Source: Ylistrum balloti (lineage: Eukaryota). From it: DNA of 64,000 nt. A program made the position numbers and the translations under genes. The notes below the pieces were generated by a model that saw nothing but the letters and a program-made list of their open reading frames with translations, was not told the DNA's origin and did not search any database. The stretch is taken from the NCBI RefSeq assembly GCF_031769215.1, contig NW_026782097.1, positions 1,922,001 through 1,986,000 on the forward strand, given 5' to 3'. Every line of letters begins with the position of its first letter. The stretch's first letter is position 1. This document shows, one piece after another, positions 1,801 through 63,245 of the stretch.

Positions 1801-3599
1801 ATTTGTAGAAAAAGATCGAGATAAGCGGCTTATGTTATCAACCAGAAACTCAATCAGTTTTATAATTTCGTCTTCCATACATTTCTCCCTCGATCTGGAC
1901 GAGATATACTACTATGTAGTGCACAACCTTTTATTTGTATTAACACTCACTTTTCTTGGAAAAGAAAGCTCCTATAACAAGAGAAGAAATGTTTTCCTTC
2001 AGTTTAGAATTGGTGGTGTACAGAGTAAAAAATGTCAGGTGCTCTTGTAGAAGTAATCGATTTGAAAGAGCGTCAAATATTAGCTTACATGGCTTTTTGT
2101 GAAGTTTCTAAATCCAATATAAATGGGGGAGGTCCGTATCCTTATCATGAATAGTAAATTTTAATTATCGTAATACTGCAACATGATTAGCCTAGTTTTG
2201 CTCTATTATATCTAACTCCGTATTTGTATTAAAAGGTGTTATTCACTTATGTGTCTCTTGTACAATCTCAGTCTCTGCTTTTTACTAATGTGACCTTGAG
2301 GCTTGCAGATATTTCTATTGCAATAGTGGTAATATTCACCAAGAAGTTGGTGAGATGTCTTGTACATGGCATATTGTTTAATCAATGATGATCACGATTG
2401 GCAGCTTTTAATACATTTCATTGATGTACATGTAGGTGTTCTGCGGGGAGGAAACGCTTTAGTAAAAGCGTCTTTGTGATAGGGGGCAAAGGTACTACAG
2501 GTTAAGTTTTGTTACGTGCGCACCATGCATAAAAAGCGCTTACTAATGCAAACTTTATTTCCTAAAGCGGAATCTGTATAAAATGGTACCAATAATATCT
2601 GTCCCCATGCTGAGCAGAGCCCTCATAAAAAGTAAAATGTCTTCAGCTCTTAAAATCTGGGAATATTGTCAGGATGCTTGCGGCAGAAACTGTTAAAATG
2701 TGGTATGGCGAGAGAGAAGGCAATAACTGCTTCTCGGCTTGTCTAATAATTGTCCTGGTCTTCTGAAAATGTAGAAAATGTCATCTAGGAGAAAGAAAAT
2801 TACACAAAAATGCAATATAATCGAGCTTCGTATGTCTAATGATACACAGAAAGGTAGTTATCAAAGGAATAGAGTAGATCACCGTAGTGGGAATGTCTGC
2901 TACCAGGGAACAATGTCCTGATCAAATCTTGTAATCTTCCAACAATATTTCAATTTCATGTATACTCGCGGAAAAGTTTATTTTTGATAGTTATTATTTT
3001 TACATGACTCATTAGCTCATTGTTTGGGTTTCCCGATTAGTTTATCATTACTTAATATATTTTGATGATTTTTGTTGACGAAGTTGGCGTGAATGGCGTT
3101 TAAAGAAGGGTACCATACGCCGTTTCCGATCCACATCAGACGCATGTCTGCCTACCCTTGGCTTCAGTCGTTGATCTTACTCTCCTTTAAATTGACCCCA
3201 TCAAGGTATTTATCGTTCTTTTAGGGATAGTATTCCACTTCTGAATAAGGGCCTGCGTGAGTTGAACGACGTTATATGGGACGTTACGACAAATTCTATC
3301 AACATAGGGCCTTGCGTTGCCCTGCTGCAACGAGATATGTTAGAAACACATCACTGATTGCGTACTTGTTCGTAATAAACCCCATACCAAATAAATATTC
3401 TAGTGTTTTGCTATTCGATGACATTTTAATTAATATCTGATGGGCTTTTCCTTCATTAACTTTCCCGTTTGATGAGCTGTGTTTTCGTCCACCAGGGGTT
3501 GCATTTCTGTTTTAAGGTTTCCTTGTGGTTTTGGATGCAATATTGACATGTGTCTGATTGAGGTTTTCTGTGTATTTGTCGATATCTGTTTTGCATGTT

Positions 3600-3830: not shown

Positions 3831-4234
3831 CGGTTAGGGATCTAGGTGGTTGCTATCCAGAAATATAAAATTTTTAATTTTAGGGAATTTTAAATCGTCA
3901 TGCAGCTTTGTCGATGTTGGCTTCGTTGTATGAAAATGTCTTTTTTGTTATGTACCTTCCTATCCTTTTGGGTATGTACAATGGACGTGGTGATTACATC
4001 TCTTGTTATTGAAAGACGTAAATAATAAATCTGAAAGTGAAATTGAAAGACCTTGCAAGGTCTTTGTGACTTGTCCTCATAAGCTCTTCGATAAATTGAA
4101 CAAAAGCATGCTAGCCTATAAAGAAACACAGTAAGTTCCCATAGTATGGTAATAGTTTGGTACATCTTATCAACTAAACTCTGTCCTTTAGGGAGACTAG
4201 ACTGTGGTGGGTATTTTTTTCTATTTGAGAAGAC

Positions 4235-4410: not shown

Positions 4411-7400
4411 TTTCTTATTATTCCAATGACTTGTTGCGCTGTTGTTGTTGTTCTTTAACTCAAAGAGTGATACCTGATGTCTACAGGTGCGCCGAGGTAC
4501 AAATTGGATGTAGTCACTGCACAGTTCTTTATACTAAATTCAGTGCAATTATGTCTATTGTGTAAATCGCTAGAAGATACATTATAGTTCTCATTATGTT
4601 ACCGCCTAAAAACATAATTTGAATGTCATCTTTAGTGGAGGATTTTTGTAAATATATTATACATTGGAATCGTATTTAAGATAAACGTCATTTATTTAAA
4701 TGCAGAGCCTGTCAATAAATTAATTAGATACGCTATGTTGCTGAAATATTGAGAAATAATTCAATAAGTGGGCCATCTAACAATAAATATCAATAAAAGC
4801 TGCTAAGGAAACAAAACTGTAATCTTATATCACGATATATAATGAGTTTCTTCTGATGTACGATATTACTGGGGGTTGTATTCAGTGTATTAATATATAA
4901 CTATCTCTTAACTGTAATAATATTAAGGATTGAGCACCGCTGCCATTTACTCCATAATTCGTTCTTGTGTCATATTTTATTTTCAATGAATATGCTGTTT
5001 TATCATTTCAATTTTCATTTTATTCTGTTGTATTCTGTAATGACATATCTGTTTTCTAACATATTTTCTTGATAAGGAATACTTTAAAATTTGCTTTCTA
5101 TTGTCATAGACATTCTATACAAATACACACGGCAAAATCAATTAACAATACTGCAGACATATCAGAACACGTAAAGTACAGTTAGTGTTTTCCCTCTCAA
5201 ATACCTACCAATTTACCATGGTAGGAAAACTACTAATTTGTTTATCGTAAAAAATCAATTAGCAGAGAACCATAACGATGTTTCTAAAATATTGAATTAA
5301 GGAAGGTTTGATGGATGAGTTCTTTTGACGTTCGTGTCTCCAATACCAACTTCAACCCTATGTCACGAAAATACTTGTTGGTTTATTATGCTTGTTCAAC
5401 ACAGTTCTTCCCTTGGTTGGTTATGTATCTGTTTAGCGAAATATTTTCAATTTGGTGAGCTTATCTGTGGACTTGTATTTGGCCTCATTGTTATATCGAG
5501 AAGAAAGTTAAATTACATTTGAAAATTGCATTATGGGATGTGATGTAAGATTTATAAATGAGGATCATCAGACTTGGAATGGTAAATAAAAACAAGCATT
5601 TCATAAGTATGCATCTATACATGTGCTGCTATACTATTATATATGATAGTGTAAATAATGATGATAGACAGATTGTTCACTTTCTGTACATATATTGATA
5701 TCGAGATAAATTCCACACGTAAATACAGTAATGCTTCATCACGAATGAAAAATTATCATCTGATTGATTGACCATAAAGGTGTGACATCCTTATAAAACT
5801 TCGCTTCTGTTACAATGGTACAATGATGCCGATAAATCTTAGCTTAATACGTTTTCATCAACACCAGTCATTGTCAGAAGCGGGCAGATAAATAGGGGGA
5901 GATAAATTCAAAATTGATGTGATCCTAGAGTCACATGTAACTATAACCTGTAACAAGATACTTATATCAACACCGAAGACGTTGCTTTCAGATAAACAAT
6001 TTTATTTATTATCAAAAGAAATGTCAATCTAAGAAAATGAAATGGAAGACTTGGCAAGGTATTCCTTTCAAATGTAGATAAGTTCTTTGATAACTGAAAT
6101 CTCGTATGAAAACAAGCAGGCAAGAGTGGGGTACATTTAGTTAGCAGGAACATTATAGCTGTCTGTTGTAAGGACTGTTTCAGCTATTCCAACAGGTGGA
6201 CTGCAATCTCCATTCCTTTCTCTTTGTATCTTAATATAAATGTTATGAGGAAATTCCATTATTTTATTTTCACAATACTGAAGAGGTACGGCCGGGTATG
6301 GTAACTTTCAAGCAAGGGCATACGATAAATTAGACCTTAGTGTGAGGAAGAACACACCGCAGACAAGAATGTGATATAAATACATGCAAAATGGTGTTAA
6401 AGCGATTGTTGTTGTACCAAGAACTAAACTGTATATATCTATATAATAAAACTAATAGGTTTAAGAAAAGCAGAACTAATATCCGTCTCATTGATTTCTG
6501 GCTTGAAAGACACGTAACTTAACAGATAAAATATACACGTGGCTGTGTAACTATTTGTGTTCTATACAAAACTGAACGTTTATCAGAAGCTTGGTCTATT
6601 CCTTTAATGTGACCTTTTCATGATGTCCTTTAATTTGAAAACAAGAGATTGTTGAATTGATACCAACCATTGTATATCTCACCAGAAGATGGAATGAAAG
6701 TCGAATCCAATTTTTGTCTCATCAACTACACTGTACAACTCAATCAGAGGAGGCAGCTTCCGCTAGGCTGTTTAAGTGATATAACGATTTCAGTGGTACA
6801 CTGAGCGTTGATATCGACAGCTAATGGGTAAACATACAACCTTAGGTATCGAGATCTGCATGTTGAAGATGACGATGGTGAACTTTCATGTCCGCAAAAA
6901 TGATTGACTTAGGAGAAAAGGTTATTCCCAGCGCGAGATGAAGTCAAACGTAAATCTAGTAGTTTCATTATGGAACTACCTCATTGGTTAGTTCAAAGTT
7001 TGTTAAAAGTAAAATATTTATACTGTAGAATGTACCGCCATTTAATACAAACAAGTAACTGTCGTCGACATTTGATGGCTGCTGATTCTATTTGAAAACT
7101 CAGTTCGTTGGCATCATCATCATCATCATCATCCGTGAATTTTAAGATACAAAATATAAATAAACGGAATACTACAGATATGTTTTCTTTAGGGTTTGAA
7201 GTAGAGTAACCCTAACACCCAAGGAGGATTGCCCTGTATTGATCTAATATCGATCCGAAGTTGCGAAAGCCTTTTTCAAATGATATTTGAAGACCATGTG
7301 TCGGCTGGCATGCTGTATAATCTTGTGATATTGTTCGGCACACCTGTTGTCCAAATACCATAGACGTGTAATGTGAGCATAATGCACATGAGAAAGCAAG

Positions 7401-7823
7401 ATCAGACAACGATTGTATATTAAATCTGGTGAATATAGAAAGGTTTTGATTAAAGTGCCTTATAAACGTCTTGTTTTAGACCATTCATATGATGGGAGAG
7501 ACATTGCTATGGCTTGATGAAGACAATAATACGCCGACATATTTTCACTAACCGTTTTTTTTTTAGATACATTGCACTTCTAGGAACCCATCCCTTGCTC
7601 GCCAATCAGAACTTGATAACGAATCATGTCTACCTTTTTATAAATATTTTACGGTATTGTATTACAAATATATATTTCATTGTTTTTAAGGATACATTAA
7701 TAATACATTACAGTTGTAAAGTAGGCTTATTTTGTTAAGGAACTATATAACAAATATCGTATTTGTTTTGTAGTTACTAGGGTGCTTGATTACATATATA
7801 TTATCAGAGTTGTTTTGTAATTA

Positions 7824-8258
7824 CCAGTATAATTATAATTACATATTAGATTTGTTTTAGTTACTAGGATAAACTATCACAGTTACAATGTACAATATCG
7901 GACTGCTTTTTACCAGTATAATTACAATTACATATTAGATTTGTTTTAGTTACTAGGGTAGTCTATTACATTACAATATGACTGCTTTTTACCAGTATAA
8001 TTACAATTACATATTAGATTTGGTTTAGTTACTAGGGTAAACTATTACAGTTACAATGTACAATATCGGACTGCTTTTTACCAGTATAATTACAATTACA
8101 TATTAGATTTGGTTTAGTTACTAGGGTAAACTATTACAGTTACAATGTACAATATCGGACTGCTTTTTACCAGTATAATTACAATTACATATTAGATTTG
8201 TTTTAGTTACTAGGGTAAACTATTACAGTTACAATGTACAATATCGGATTTTTTGTTG
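7824..8258. repeat. 89-bp tandem repeat (~5 copies) with diverged ~44-bp relatives extending to ~8640
   Basis: CCAGTATAATT recurs at 7824, 7913, 7992, 8081 and 8170. Confidence 0.9.
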
Positions 8259-9779
8259 TTATCAGTTTAGTTTTTCCTGTTACGGAGGTACTATATTATA
8301 TGCACTACTAATTGTTTAGTAATTGCTGGTATAATCACAGTTACTTGTAAGATTTGTTTTCTGTTACGAAGGTACTATATTATATGCACTACTAAACTTC
8401 TGTAATTGCTGCTATGATTACGTGTAATATTTGTTTTCTGTTACGGGGGTACTATATTACGTATAAGATATGGATTTTGCTTTGTAGTTACTACTATAAT
8501 TAGTTACGTATATGATTTGTCGTTGGTAACTTATACAATTACAGTTACATAACACATTTGATTTGTAGTAACCAGGGTAATATATTACAATTATAATGTA
8601 AGATTTGTATTGTAGTTGCTAGTATAATTGAAGTTAGATATCAGATTTATCGGTGAACAGGGTAATACACTACAGTTTGGAATCGTTTATAGTTAGGAAG
8701 AAGCTTGGAATGATGCTTCTGTCGTCTGTTTATTAGATAATTTCTTATCTACATCTAAGGTTCATTCTTTGTTAGATTACAGGACAAGCAACGTCAACGC
8801 GATAAAACACATTTGATTGTTATTCTTTTACTCAACCTATCGCTGCTTCCGTTTGGTGATATTAGTTTTGACGATATCAGGTTTGTTAAAAAATATCAAA
8901 TCATAGCTCTGCTTCAGATTGGTTTAGTATATATGCTAGACGACACATGAAGTTCTGTATACGATTAGGTTCATATGTATACTAGGTTATAGGTAAACTG
9001 ATGATAGAATGTAATGTTATCAGGGAGATAAGTCTGTGTATATAGACTGAAAAACAGGACGGTATAACATAAATTCTGCAATAAGATGGAAGATATCTCG
9101 ACATCTATGTTGGGTGTCCTGAGATACAGAGGGGTTTTAAAAGTTTTACCCTAACCCTACCTGATCTATGTAAGGATATTGTGCAAATTGGAAGCTATTG
9201 GAGACTGCAGTGGCATGTGCCCTACTATCAGTATATGATTGTATCAGAATGGTTGTATATTGACGTCCGCACCAGGGGACGTGATAGCGTGTATATCGAC
9301 ACATTATACTTATAACAGTCTTACCCTTCATTAGTATGTGGTATTTACGTGACAGCTGAAATCTAGACATAGTCATCTGAAAAAAAAATAGTGAAATGCA
9401 TTTTTATAGTATTATTTTTCTAGGCAAATGTAACCATATACAACACGTGATTGTTATCCATGCACAATATAGCTCACATGAAGGAAATGAAATATGATTT
9501 GTTGCACAGACACGATATGCAAGCACTGTCCATGAGGAAGTATGTAATAATTTCCTCATACGCAATGCAGTTCCAAATATCCAGCAATAGGTATTGGCCT
9601 TTTCGAATCGATCCTTGCTCCACCGATATCACGGAATCAGATTACATAATCTTGTGTACATTTATATATATAAGACATATTAGATGTTGATTGCTTCGGT
9701 GATGACCGTTTCAATGGTTCCCCAATTTTAACCTACAGTAGACGCTTTTTTCCTCTCCAATGAACAATAGGTAATTTTC

Positions 9780-10653
9780 AATTCACCATTACTAAGCCTT
9801 GTCCTCGCCGTATTACTAGAATGGATACAGCCTATCGCGTGGCTGAAAGGCGCGCGCGGGAGAGCCGTATGTTGGGTAGTATTATGTGTCGCCGAGCTCT
9901 CTGGTGATGAAGGTGTAATTCTTAGGTCTTCTGTGAGATGGCAGAAGTCGAGATTGAAAACACGAGGAGCGGTATATCAGCGATAGTGTTAATTTGAACC
10001 CGGGATAGATAAACACACTGCTTGATTTGTAAAAGAAATCGATAGCATATCGCATGTGTGTTTTCTAATATATAACCATCAAACTATTTTATAGTTTTGT
10101 CAAGTTTTAAACATTCTTGGCAAATTCTCTTTTTTTCTGTTTCGTGTAGACACTACCTACTCTTAAGAGACGATCTGATTGGCCATTAAGACTCGCTCTA
10201 ACTAGTGACCACGTGCTGAGCCCACTTGCTAAAATCTCTACTGAGACAAGCAGCTGTCTATCAAATATTGGTAACAAGTATCAAAGATAAATCTGTTCGT
10301 GTGCTGCTTCTGGTGGTGCCGTTATACAATACGGGTTTTTATACTATGGAATATACGTGAATGAAGTCCAAGGAGGTGTTTCATATTCTGAATGGAATAT
10401 AAAAACACCCACGTGTAAAATGGGTTCATTGCCGCGCTATTAGTATACGTATCGTCAGGTTGCTCACACACAACGAAGCTGGCTTTAACACGGAGAGGCC
10501 TTGTGTGAAGTTGTCCTTTATTAATAACAACGTGTTTTGAGCGGAATCTAGTGTATACATTGTGCAATGGTTCGTAGTTAGTACTATACGGATGTGTAAT
10601 TCTGGCTGTTTTTTTCACTAAAACAATGGAAGTTATTTAGTCAATAGGAATGA
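9780..10653 (+). promoter_or_regulatory. Candidate promoter / 5' UTR region of the nAChR gene
   Basis: Locally CpG-rich (GGCGCGCGCGGG at ~9849), inverted CCAAT (ATTGG at ~10178), E-boxes CACGTG (~10209, ~10410) and CAGCTG (~10251), immediately upstream of the first nAChR-like exon. Motif-level evidence only. Confidence 0.35.
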
Positions 10654-10854
10654 ATGCATCTTTACTTGAAAATGCCTCTCCTGGCTATTCTGGCGATTTT
10701 CCTAGGAATTGAAATTCTTGCCCTTCCAACAGACGAACAAAGACTCTTGGAGACTGTTTTATATGATTACAATCAAGCATCTAGACCAGTATTTAATGCC
10801 GCTAAAACGGTTGTTGTTAAGTTTGGGATTACCCTCACCCAGATTTCTGATATG
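10654..10854 (+). CDS. Nicotinic acetylcholine receptor subunit, N-terminal exon A (putative signal peptide + alpha1 helix to beta1 strand); an alternative acceptor would give 10706-10854
   Basis: MHLYLKMPLLAILAIFLGIEILALPTDEQRLLETVLYDYNQASRPVFNAAKTVVVKFGITLTQISDM followed by phase-0 donor GTAAGT at 10855. It matches the Cys-loop ExRLxxxL..Y....RPV......V.F...L.QI.D pattern. A phase-1 acceptor TTTTCCTAG|GA is also available at 10705/10706. Confidence 0.9.
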
Positions 10855-10904
10855 GTAAGTAAATTACTTATTAATGCAAGTCTTATGTTTGTTTCTGATT
10901 GTAG

Positions 10905-11059
10905 TTTCGTCCAAAAAGAACAATCACAGACTGCCAGATGAGCATCGTTTATTACAGAATATTCTTGCTCACTACGATACGGCTGCGAGACCTGTTTACA
11001 ATGCCTCGCATAATGTCACAGTACAATTCGGATATACCCTTACTCAAATCGCTGATATG
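10905..11059 (+). CDS. Nicotinic acetylcholine receptor subunit, N-terminal exon B (paralog of exon A)
   Basis: Acceptor TTTGTTTCTGATTGTAG|TT (phase 1), 155 nt encoding (V)SSKKNNHRLPDEHRLLQNILAHYDTAARPVYNASHNVTVQFGYTLTQIADM, then phase-0 donor GTGAGT at 11060. Confidence 0.92.
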
Positions 11060-11780
11060 GTGAGTTCTTTCTTATTTTACTAGTACCGACACCCGAGACA
11101 GGTTAACACAAGGACCCCGCAATTCATATCATGCATTTTTATACACTTTATTCACTTGTGGCACTTCATTTAAATATTCACTTTTGTAAATGAAATAATA
11201 ATAATATAATTATGATAAACATATTTTTTCTTGTAATAATCTTTGACTTCAGACTTAATGTTTCTTTCTCAAATCCTTTCATGTAGAATTTATCAAACTC
11301 ACAGTTTTTGAAAATGAGAATCATAATCTTTGATTTCTTCTTTTTCTCAGATATTTTTTAAATATGTCCAAAAACTGAAAACTATTAGAACAAAATTGTA
11401 TTTCTTAATGGGCAACGAGACGTATTTAAGATCCAGTTAGAGTCGGAGATAAAATAGTAAAAAAACATTAGCTAAGTTTCCATTGGCTCTCTATGTACAG
11501 TATCTGGTTTCATCGTCATAAGAATGTAGACGACACTTTATGCTAGATTGTATCCCTAATTACCAGACATCGTGATATTATAGGATATAGATATTTGCGG
11601 GAAGGAAGGATTGTGTAGTCCCAGCTTACATCTGTGTCTGTATAAAACAATGCAATATCAATGGACTAATAGCTACATTCAAATAAAGAATTCCGGTGCT
11701 TTGAGATTAAACAATGACAAAAGCAAATTGCCGAAAACAAAATTTATGGCGAACAGTTGTAAATAATGCACGGAAAAAAC

Positions 11781-60376: not shown

Positions 60377-60421
60377 GATGAAGTTAACCAAGTATTAACG
60401 ACTAATGTTTGGCTGGAACAG
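60377..60421 (+). CDS. Nicotinic acetylcholine receptor subunit, conserved 45-nt exon (beta1-beta2 loop to loop D)
   Basis: TTTCAG|GATGAAGTTAACCAAGTATTAACGACTAATGTTTGGCTGGAACAG|GTATGT = DEVNQVLTTNVWLEQ, matching alpha7-type DEKNQVLTTNIWLQM in sequence, length and phase. Confidence 0.95.
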
Positions 60422-62912: not shown

Positions 62913-63245
62913 TGTCATAGTGTAACGACAATATGACATCATGTCTGTGTCATAGTGTAACGACATAATAACATCATGTCTGTGTCATAGTATAATGACA
63001 ATATGACATCATGTCTGTGTCATAGTATAACGACAATATGACATCATGTCTGTGTCATAGTATAACGACAATATGACATCATGTCTGTGTCATAGTATAA
63101 CGACAATATGACATCATGTCTGTATCATAGTATAACGACAATATGACATCATGTCTGTGTCATAGAATAACAACAATATGACATCATGTCTGTGTCATAG
63201 TATAACGACAATATGACCTAATGTCTTTGTCATAGTATAATGACA
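62913..63245. repeat. 36-bp minisatellite (GTCATAGTATAACGACAATATGACATCATGTCTGTG-type), ~9 copies
   Basis: ATATGACATC recurs at 63001 and 63037; overlapping dyads GTCATA...TATGAC and GACAT-C-ATGTC. Confidence 0.95.

What the first reader, a model, noticed from the sequence alone, without database searches (positions are those of the whole stretch)
10654..11059. Tandem duplicated, probably mutually exclusive N-terminal exons in a nicotinic acetylcholine receptor gene
Seen: two adjacent exons encode the same segment of a Cys-loop receptor (alpha1 helix to beta1). They align without gaps at 24/44 identical residues (LPTDEQRLLETVLYDYNQASRPVFNAAKTVVVKFGITLTQISDM vs RLPDEHRLLQNILAHYDTAARPVYNASHNVTVQFGYTLTQIADM). 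Both are free of stops and both end DM|GT in phase 0, but there is only one downstream 45-nt exon. Known: mutually exclusive exons occur in insect nAChRs (alpha6 exons 3a/3b and 8, alpha4 exon 4). I do not recall a case for this N-terminal exon in a mollusc-type gene, but cannot exclude one. Inference: one gene makes two subunits with different N-terminal extracellular surfaces, and the divergence with intact frames suggests an old, selected switch.
Basis: partly seen in the sequence, partly recalled or inferred. Interest (0 to 1): 0.8.

Follow-up and report, generated by a model that had tools for sequence, protein, structure and literature searches.

The report
Alternative N-terminal exons in scallop nAChR
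One scallop acetylcholine-receptor gene carries two diverged copies of the exon for its outermost helix and first strand; each copy belongs to its own 5' start module, so an mRNA gets one or the other, and the layout is shared by molluscs, annelids, brachiopods and ribbon worms.

Summary
Window 10672-10854 (exon A) and 10905-11059 (exon 2B) are paralogous: 24/44 residues, tblastn E 4e-13. Across 244 kb there is only one copy of each downstream exon. The genome is Ylistrum balloti. The gene is XP_060068850.1, an alpha-type, cation-type nAChR and orthologue of Lymnaea LnAChR-G. RefSeq annotates only the exon-A form.

The two exons are not equivalent cassettes.
- Exon A has its own ATG, signal peptide and 5'UTR.
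- Exon 2B is internal and starts in phase 1. I found its partner, exon 1B (ATG plus signal peptide), about 55 kb upstream, outside the window.

The layout 1B ... A, short spacer, 2B ... 45-nt exon, with the same phases, also occurs in Argopecten (A and 2B), Mytilus, Patella, Lineus, Owenia and Lingula. RefSeq lists both N-termini as isoforms in many of these.

Both exons are under strong purifying selection between two scallops. Spliced contigs from a close relative show both A>exon 3 and 2B>exon 3. No RNA from Ylistrum itself was available.

A 50-nt spacer and a frame clash prevent productive A+2B mRNAs.

Verdict: an ancient switch, probably promoter-coupled. It is annotated automatically elsewhere, but I found no paper describing it.

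The parts
9747..10671 (+). Probable 5'UTR and promoter-proximal region of the exon-A transcript
   Evidence: Spliced contigs of a close relative (X18 record 5, X24 record 9) run from exon A upstream, colinear with the genome, to about 10204 (271 versus 261 bases between the matching blocks). A further contig (X24 record 8) matches 9747-10000. The block 10165-10289 is also conserved in Argopecten. The transcription start site is not mapped.
10672..10854 (+). Exon A: start codon, signal peptide, alpha1 helix, helix-strand loop and beta1 strand of the A-type isoform; phase-0 donor GTAAGT at 10855
   Evidence: Identical to the N-terminus of XP_060068850.1 (P0162). Ylistrum versus Argopecten: 32 synonymous and 4 non-synonymous differences. 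In a relative it is joined to exon-3 letters.
10855..10904 (+). 50-nt spacer between the donor of A and the acceptor of 2B; it must hold the branch point and polypyrimidine tract of 2B
   Evidence: It is also exactly 50 nt in Argopecten, with 30/50 bases identical. The spacer is 33, 60, 37 and 37 nt in Mytilus, Patella, Lineus and Owenia, and 191 nt in Lingula. It is retained in one Logan transcript contig, L012.
10905..11059 (+). Exon 2B: 155 nt, phase-1 acceptor, phase-0 donor GTGAGT; encodes a basic pre-helix stretch, alpha1 helix and beta1 strand of the B-type isoform
   Evidence: Ylistrum versus Argopecten: 28 synonymous and 1 non-synonymous difference, and the last 44 residues are identical. 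In a relative it is joined to exon 3 (X2 record 7) and to an upstream exon (X24 record 10). Its partner, exon 1B, lies outside the window at G000:C240:1877363-1877447 = L020:5363-5447.
60377..60421 (+). Common 45-nt exon 3 (DEVNQVLTTNVWLEQ), the shared acceptor for both 5' modules
   Evidence: It is the only copy in 244 kb. The relative's contigs continue from both A and 2B into letters that encode DEVNQVLTTN.

Best explanation
The gene is the Ylistrum balloti orthologue of Lymnaea LnAChR-G. It is an alpha-type subunit (Cys-loop, YxCC) and cation-type (GEK before M2). It has two alternative 5' modules that encode different N-termini.

Module A is the single exon 10672-10854. It carries its own 5'UTR, ATG and signal peptide fused to the alpha1-helix/beta1 segment. 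It is most likely transcribed from its own promoter, which lies inside the 55-kb first intron of the other module.

Module B is exon 1B (ATG plus signal peptide, 85 nt of coding sequence, phase-1 donor, about 55 kb upstream) plus exon 2B (10905-11059).

Either module splices to the common 45-nt exon at 60377. The products are 463 aa (A) and 482 aa (B). They share the ligand-binding loops, pore and cytoplasmic loop. They differ in the apical helix, the helix-strand loop (including N-glycosylation sequons) and strand beta1. B also has a basic extension before the helix.

Two features prevent an mRNA from productively carrying both copies.
- The donor of A lies only 50 nt from the acceptor of 2B, so the branch point of 2B is too close to that donor for the mini-intron to be spliced. 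This step is inferred.
- Phase 0 meets phase 1, so A+2B shifts the frame and stops in exon 3. This step is shown by translation.

The arrangement dates back at least to the common ancestor of molluscs, annelids, brachiopods and nemerteans.
For: Gene model and identity: (P0162 is identical to my exon-A model; contig length 3058644 equals C240).

One gene only.

A has its own ATG and signal peptide, with an in-frame stop upstream.

2B has a phase-1 acceptor, and A+2B gives a stop in exon 3.

Exon 1B: 23/32 bases match the letters upstream of 2B in a relative's contig, and the match ends exactly at GAG|GTGAGT. The ORF is MYGLGLMYCWFLYVDITTAAVNREIASR, and the relative's peptide there reads ...ATVTREISTR.

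Same layout, phases and 3n+2 length of 2B, solved exactly against RefSeq isoform pairs in Mytilus, Patella, Lineus, Owenia and Lingula. Argopecten.

Isoform pairs that differ only in this segment in Haliotis, Patella, Octopus, Biomphalaria, Bradybaena, Mytilus, Lineus, Lingula and Owenia.

A and B segments never pair within a species on a tree, and the labels cluster (0 of 500 shuffles as low).

Purifying selection on both exons.

Transcript evidence: Logan contigs of one pteriomorph for both types. In a close relative, contigs show A>exon 3 (runs X24, X18), 2B>exon 3 (X2) and upstream exon>2B (X24).

This is the only tandem pair of this exon in the genome.
Against: No RNA of Ylistrum itself was available, so use of 2B and 1B in this species rests on selection and on relatives.

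RefSeq models of three scallops contain only the A form, and no scallop B-type protein fragment was found in the protein collection.

The transcription start of the A transcript is not mapped. A long 5'UTR colinear with the genome makes a first exon likely but does not prove it.

The steric block is inferred from spacer length alone. Lingula, with a 191-nt spacer, shows that short spacing is not indispensable.

The letters upstream of 2B differ between two runs of the relative, so more than one upstream exon may feed 2B.

The A/B tree rests on 46 columns and is poorly resolved.
Confidence: 0.8

Rival explanations
1. Classical mutually exclusive cassette splicing from a single promoter. Exon A would be an internal exon spliced to a shared non-coding upstream exon, and the choice between A and 2B would be made purely at the splicing level.
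For: An AG lies shortly upstream of the ATG of A (10646-10647), with a T-rich run and a branch-like motif before it. The AG is kept in Argopecten. The very short spacer is typical of steric mutually exclusive pairs (PMC3585155).
Against: The relative's A-type contigs continue colinear with the genome for at least 466 nt upstream of the ATG, with no joint near it. Any exon joined there from the coding exon 1B would run into stops (read). A and 2B differ in length, phase and content, since A holds an ATG and signal peptide. The Argopecten polypyrimidine tract at that AG is poor.
Confidence: 0.1
2. In scallops exon 2B is an unused or nearly unused relic and only the A form is made, as the RefSeq models suggest.
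For: Ylistrum, Argopecten and Pecten RefSeq models contain only the A type. No scallop B-type fragment was found in the protein collection.
Against: Between Ylistrum and Argopecten, exon 2B has 28 synonymous differences and 1 non-synonymous difference, with intact acceptor, donor and frame, and the spacer length is kept. An intact exon 1B with a strong donor exists. A close relative (about 87-89% identical in these exons) has spliced 2B>exon 3 and upstream exon>2B contigs.
Confidence: 0.07
3. Two separate, overlapping genes: exon A and exon 2B each belong to a different receptor gene with its own downstream exons.
For: None beyond each copy having its own signal-peptide source.
Against: Only one copy of exons 3, 4, 5 and 6 exists in 244 kb. 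The nearest other LBD hit on the contig lies about 180 kb upstream of the window. In relatives both forms share all downstream residues.
Confidence: 0.02

Closest known systems
Insect nAChR alpha6 mutually exclusive exons 3a/3b (PMC5111602)
   Same: A tandemly duplicated extracellular-domain exon in a nicotinic receptor gene. One copy is used per mRNA, giving subunit variants from one gene.
   Different: The insect pair is the 45-bp, 15-residue loop-D exon. Both copies are internal, of equal size and phase, and 899 bp apart in Tuta. Here the duplicated unit is the exon upstream of the 45-nt exon. One copy is fused to its own start codon and signal peptide, the other needs a distant exon 1B, and the copies are 33-60 nt apart in six of seven species.
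Human GABA-A receptor beta3 alternative first exons 1 and 1A (PMC1934366)
   Same: A Cys-loop receptor gene with alternative first exons, each with its own promoter and its own signal peptide, joining common downstream exons.
   Different: [quoted passage not shown] Here 44 residues of the folded extracellular domain (helix alpha1 to strand beta1) are exchanged as well. One module also has two exons, with the other module nested in its intron.
Steric and frame-based enforcement of mutually exclusive exons (alpha-tropomyosin exons 2/3 from my own knowledge; summarised in PMC3585155; OGDH 4a/4b, PMC7969005)
   Same: The two exons are so close that the intron between them should not be spliceable. 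Double inclusion breaks the frame, so surveillance would remove it.
   Different: In those cases both exons are internal and share both flanking exons. Here the lock would act on transcripts started at the A promoter, so that they skip 2B. No splicing assay was done here.
RefSeq isoforms X1/X2 of 'neuronal acetylcholine receptor subunit alpha-10-like' in Haliotis, Patella, Octopus, Biomphalaria, Mytilus, Lineus and Lingula
   Same: These are the orthologous genes with the same two N-termini. Exon order and phases were solved in five species.
   Different: They are automatic gene models. I found no paper that describes the pair. The main survey of lophotrochozoan nAChRs (PMC6896357) does not use the words isoform or alternative. 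The scallop models lack the B form.

Membership tests
Nicotinic acetylcholine receptor, alpha-type cationic subunit (orthology group of Lymnaea LnAChR-G) | Neur_chan_LBD plus Neur_chan_memb domains with four transmembrane segments | tested here: met
   Pfam PF02931 and PF02932 are on record for P0162. An LBD hit at C240:2020295-2020639 corresponds to exon 5. Best solved relatives are the alpha4, alpha7 and alpha3 subunits, E about 1e-108.
Nicotinic acetylcholine receptor, alpha-type cationic subunit (orthology group of Lymnaea LnAChR-G) | Cys-loop (C-x13-C), vicinal cysteines in loop C (YxCC), and a GEK motif before M2 for cation selectivity | tested here: met
   Read from the assembled protein: CKIDITYFPFDDQTC, YYPCC and PPDSGEKITLG. 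Ion selectivity itself was not measured.
Nicotinic acetylcholine receptor, alpha-type cationic subunit (orthology group of Lymnaea LnAChR-G) | Orthology to LnAChR-G rather than to another subunit | tested here: inconclusive
   LnAChR-G (P0152, ABA60386.1) sits among the top hits of the same group and has the B-type N-terminus. No full-length phylogeny with all Lymnaea subunits was made.
Classical mutually exclusive cassette exons | Tandem paralogous exons, exactly one of which appears in each mRNA | tested here: met
   Paralogy. One copy per product in the RefSeq isoforms and transcript contigs of relatives. Not testable in Ylistrum RNA.
Classical mutually exclusive cassette exons | Both exons internal, flanked on both sides by the same constitutive exons, with the same phase so they are interchangeable | tested here: not met
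   A holds the ATG and signal peptide, with an in-frame TGA upstream and a colinear 5'UTR in a relative. 2B has a phase-1 acceptor and needs exon 1B. Coding lengths are 183 and 155 nt.
Alternative promoter / alternative first exon usage | Each 5' module has its own start codon, and both join one common downstream exon | tested here: met
   Start codons and signal peptides. Both join exon 3 in relatives.
Alternative promoter / alternative first exon usage | Separate transcription start sites | tested here: inconclusive
   The A-type contigs of a relative extend at least 466 nt upstream of the ATG without a joint. The B-type contig L017 has a 185-nt leader before exon 1B's ATG. No start site was mapped, and contigs cannot show starts.
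Steric plus frame lock of exon exclusivity | The intron between the two exons is too short to splice, or the branch point is too close to the donor | not testable with these tools
   As a sequence feature the spacer is 50 nt here and in Argopecten, and 33, 60, 37 and 37 nt in four other species, but 191 nt in Lingula. Whether splicing is blocked needs an assay.
Steric plus frame lock of exon exclusivity | Inclusion of both exons shifts the frame and gives a premature stop | tested here: met
   A+2B translation stops in exon 3. 2B is 3n+2 in all seven species and A ends in phase 0 in all.

The most novel reading that the evidence does not exclude
This is a pan-lophotrochozoan, promoter-coupled 'nested first exon' switch more than 500 million years old, held in place by a steric and reading-frame double lock. 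The two N-termini (apical helix, glycosylated loop and strand beta1; the B form also has a conserved polybasic extension before the helix) give one nicotinic subunit two distinct assembly, targeting or pharmacological identities. That would make it the first conserved alternative-N-terminus system described for nicotinic receptors outside insects.
Probability: 0.35. Interest if true: 0.7.

Novelty: new variant of a known kind. Interest (0 to 1): 0.55.

Why it matters
Bivalves have more than 100 nicotinic receptor genes, most of them intronless retrocopies. This is one of the old, intron-rich genes, and it diversifies in a different way, through two 5' modules kept across at least four phyla.

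The finding gives a concrete, testable case of how a promoter choice can be hard-wired to a protein-domain choice. One first exon is placed directly against the acceptor of its paralogue.

It points to the apical helix and strand beta1 as a functionally tuned part of an invertebrate nicotinic subunit.

On the practical side, the scallop gene models lack the 482-residue B isoform and its exon 1B, which lies 55 kb upstream.

Tried and rejected

Exon 1B by heuristics: ORF, hydrophobicity and phase-1 donor scans of the 30 kb upstream gave no convincing site. Pairing candidates with the 10 kb upstream of Argopecten exon A gave nothing. tblastn with the Mytilus and Mizuhopecten N-termini gave nothing. 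A candidate at window 3914-3971 scored no better than other candidates. I dropped it once the real exon 1B was found with the relative's loose-end letters. A fuzzy regex search timed out and was replaced by a Hamming scan.

Loci not obtainable: Pecten maximus and Haliotis rubra, because the gene range is too long. Lingula isoform X2 is not on record, so X1 was used instead.

A profile search for scallop B-type protein fragments found none. It did find both types in one other pteriomorph.

The conserved block at window 2731-2799 versus Argopecten 791-859 is not a coding exon 1B.

X10 record 3 (organism C) matches only 38 nt of exon 2B. I treated it as uninformative.

Arthropod relatives (Procambarus, Parasteatoda) have isoforms, but these do not differ in this exon.

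Full report
OBSERVATION

- Exon A (10672-10854) reads MPLLAIL...GITLTQISDM and is followed by GTAAGT.
- Exon 2B (10905-11059) follows a pyrimidine-rich acceptor, reads (x)SSKKNNHRLPDEH...GYTLTQIADM, and is followed by GTGAGT.
- The homologous 44 residues are 24/44 identical without gaps. Reciprocal tblastn inside the window gives E about 5e-13, while every other hit has E above 2.
- The 45-nt exon (DEVNQVLTTNVWLEQ) lies at 60377-60421.

GENE AND SPECIES

The window is G000:C240:1922001-1986000 of a 648-Mb genome. That genome has more than 150 Neur_chan_LBD hits, most of them intronless.

I took DNA beyond the window and assembled the rest of the gene, in window coordinates:
- exon 4: 97041-97150 (110 nt);
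- exon 5: 98294-98829;
- exon 6: 107964-108481.

The exon-A product has 463 residues. It carries a Cys-loop, YYPCC in loop C, and GEK before M2. It is identical to XP_060068850.1, 'acetylcholine receptor subunit alpha-1-A-like [Ylistrum balloti]', whose contig length of 3058644 equals that of C240. Lymnaea LnAChR-G (ABA60386.1) belongs to the same group of close relatives.

Over 244 kb there is one copy each of exons 3 to 6, and only A and 2B are duplicated. In the whole genome this is the only tandem pair of this exon. Two separate genes are therefore excluded.

THE TWO COPIES ARE NOT EQUIVALENT

Exon A contains the start codon and a signal peptide, and it has an in-frame TGA just upstream. 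Exon 2B is 155 nt (3n+2) and begins with two bases of a split codon, so it needs an upstream exon that ends in phase 1. Joining A to 2B shifts the frame and stops in exon 3.

RELATIVES

RefSeq and other models of the orthologue have pairs of isoforms that differ only up to ...DM|DEVNQVL.
- One type has a short signal peptide directly before (P)TDEQRL...GITLTQISDM. This is the A type.
- The other type has a signal peptide, a basic stretch, then IPDEQ..., usually ending in ...QIADM. This is the B type.

Such pairs occur in Haliotis, Patella, Octopus, Biomphalaria, Bradybaena and Mytilus edulis. They also occur in the nemertean Lineus, the brachiopod Lingula and the annelid Owenia.

I mapped both isoforms exactly onto genomic loci of five species. 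In all five the order is exon 1B (ATG plus signal peptide, phase-1 donor, last base G), then 7-33 kb of intron, then exon A, then a spacer, then exon 2B (3n+2), then a long intron, then the 45-nt exon.

The spacer is 33 nt in Mytilus, 60 in Patella, 37 in Lineus, 37 in Owenia and 191 in Lingula. Argopecten irradians has the same A, 50-nt spacer, 2B arrangement as Ylistrum.

On a tree of the 46-residue segments, A and B of one species never pair. The two labels cluster far more than shuffled labels do (0 of 500 shuffles as low). Resolution is low with 46 columns. Together with the conserved positions and phases, this places the duplication before the split of these phyla.

SELECTION IN SCALLOPS

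Between Ylistrum and Argopecten:
- exon A has 32 synonymous and 4 non-synonymous differences;
- exon 2B has 28 synonymous and 1 non-synonymous difference, with the last 44 residues identical;
- the spacer is only 30/50 identical and the flanking introns do not align.

Exon 2B is therefore a constrained coding exon, not a relic.

TRANSCRIPTS

No RNA run of Ylistrum was on offer. Evidence from other species is as follows.

Logan contigs of one other pteriomorph bivalve carry both forms:
- a B-type contig with signal peptide and leader (L017, P0327);
- an A-type fragment (P0331);
- a contig in which the mini-intron between A and 2B is retained while 2B is spliced onward (L012);
- a contig with a different 5' exon joined to 2B (L011).

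I laid contigs of four runs on window 5300-11299 at 80% likeness. This recovered a close relative, coded organism B, about 87-89% identical in these exons. Of the 14 listed differences in exon A, 11 are at third codon positions.
- X24 record 9 and X18 record 5 cover exon A and continue into 45 letters that encode DEVNQVLTTN, which is exon 3. Upstream they stay colinear with the genome to about 10204.
- X2 record 7 covers exon 2B and continues for 176 letters that begin with the same exon-3 sequence.
- X24 record 10 has 510 letters of upstream sequence joined exactly at the 2B acceptor, and it runs unspliced past the 2B donor.

EXON 1B IN YLISTRUM

The 32 letters before 2B in X24 record 10 have no match within 30 kb upstream of exon A. 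They match 23/32 bases at window coordinate -44584, and the match ends exactly at GAG|GTGAGT.

The frame fixed by the junction gives MYGLGLMYCWFLYVDITTAAVNREIASR after an in-frame stop, 85 nt in phase 1 with last base G. The relative's peptide there reads ...ATVTREISTR.

The exon lies at C240:1877363-1877447 (L020:5363-5447), 55.2 kb upstream of exon A. With 2B and the common exons it gives a 482-residue B isoform. An acceptor-like site 25 nt before its ATG suggests a further leader exon.

MECHANISM

Shown:
- two 5' modules, each with its own start codon and signal peptide;
- a common acceptor exon;
- a frame clash between A and 2B that is conserved in seven species;
- a short spacer in six of the seven.

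Inferred:
- Module A has its own promoter inside intron 1B. This rests on a 5'UTR of at least 466 nt that is colinear with the genome in the relative.
- In transcripts started there, the donor of A cannot use the 2B acceptor, because the branch point must lie within about 20-30 nt of that donor. Such steric exclusion is a known way to enforce mutually exclusive exons, and mRNA surveillance is another (PMC3585155; PMC7969005).
- Transcripts from the upstream promoter join 1B to 2B and treat A as intron.

WHAT DIFFERS IN THE PROTEIN

By alignment to solved alpha4 and alpha7 structures, the exchanged part is the N-terminal helix, the loop after it, and strand beta1 up to the turn before the loop-D strand.
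- Scallop A has NAA where nearly all other sequences compared, including scallop B, have the sequon NAS. Scallop B has a second sequon, NVT.
- B forms carry a basic stretch before the helix in most species.
- Loops A to C, the pore and the cytoplasmic loop are shared.

My best guess, untested, is that the difference affects assembly, surface delivery or complementary-face pharmacology.

COMPARISON AND NOVELTY

The closest precedent in nicotinic receptors is the insect alpha6 3a/3b pair. That pair is the neighbouring 45-bp exon and is a true cassette pair (PMC5111602).

I found no paper describing the lophotrochozoan pair. The main survey of these genes does not mention isoforms (PMC6896357). 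Automatic RefSeq models already contain both forms in several species, so the sequences are not new. What is new is the recognition of one conserved architecture and its likely lock, and the missing B isoform and exon 1B in scallops.

LIMITS

- There is no RNA from Ylistrum.
- No start sites were mapped.
- No splicing or functional assay was done.
- The identity of organism B is coded.
- The run of 155 N in intron 3 was left untouched.

Noticed in passing
This may be a translational control element of the A transcript.
   Followed up: partly
L011:1-40 and the loose ends at 10903 and 10912: More than one upstream exon is joined to exon 2B. In a Logan pteriomorph, one 5' exon carries an in-frame TAG (L011) while another encodes the signal peptide (L017). 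In organism B, the letters before 2B differ between runs X2 (...CTGCAACCAG) and X24 (...CCACTCGAG).
   Followed up: partly
L012:1-110: This transcript contig retains the mini-intron between exon A and exon 2B while 2B is spliced to exon 3. It is either a splicing intermediate of the long intron 1B, or use of the 2B donor by a transcript started at A. Either way it is non-productive, since a stop follows.
   Followed up: no
L016:1233-1307 and 10001-10075: Lingula anatina has two identical copies of the coding part of exon 1B, 8.8 kb apart.
   Followed up: no
P0170, P0288 (Mya arenaria and Mercenaria mercenaria isoforms X2): These RefSeq isoforms skip the 45-nt exon 3 in frame (15 residues, loop-D strand). 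This is the same kind of skipping reported for insect alpha6 exon 3.
   Followed up: no
P0275, P0279, P0317 (Octopus and Dimorphilus): These models start at the M of ...DM|DEVNQ, with neither alternative exon and no signal peptide. They are probably partial or non-productive transcripts.
   Followed up: no
P0165 (Mizuhopecten yessoensis) and P0002 (Elysia marginata): These orthologue models are chimeric with transposon-like parts: an endonuclease/exonuclease/phosphatase domain at the C-terminus of P0165, and an unrelated 170-residue N-terminus in P0002. They are likely annotation errors caused by insertions in the long introns.
   Followed up: no
window 62945-63204, minus strand: tblastn picked up six short peptide matches, five of them 35 nt apart, on the minus strand in intron 3. 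This suggests a 35-nt tandem repeat.
   Followed up: no
L005, window coordinates 105171-105773: A 201-codon open frame in intron 5 is made of about 16-residue repeats (ELTTPVYCCHVL-like). It looks like a minisatellite rather than an exon.
   Followed up: no
G000:C240:1742249-1742569 and 1715606-1715740: Another intron-containing nAChR gene lies about 180-200 kb upstream on the same strand, seen as an LBD hit and an exon-2-like hit.
   Followed up: no
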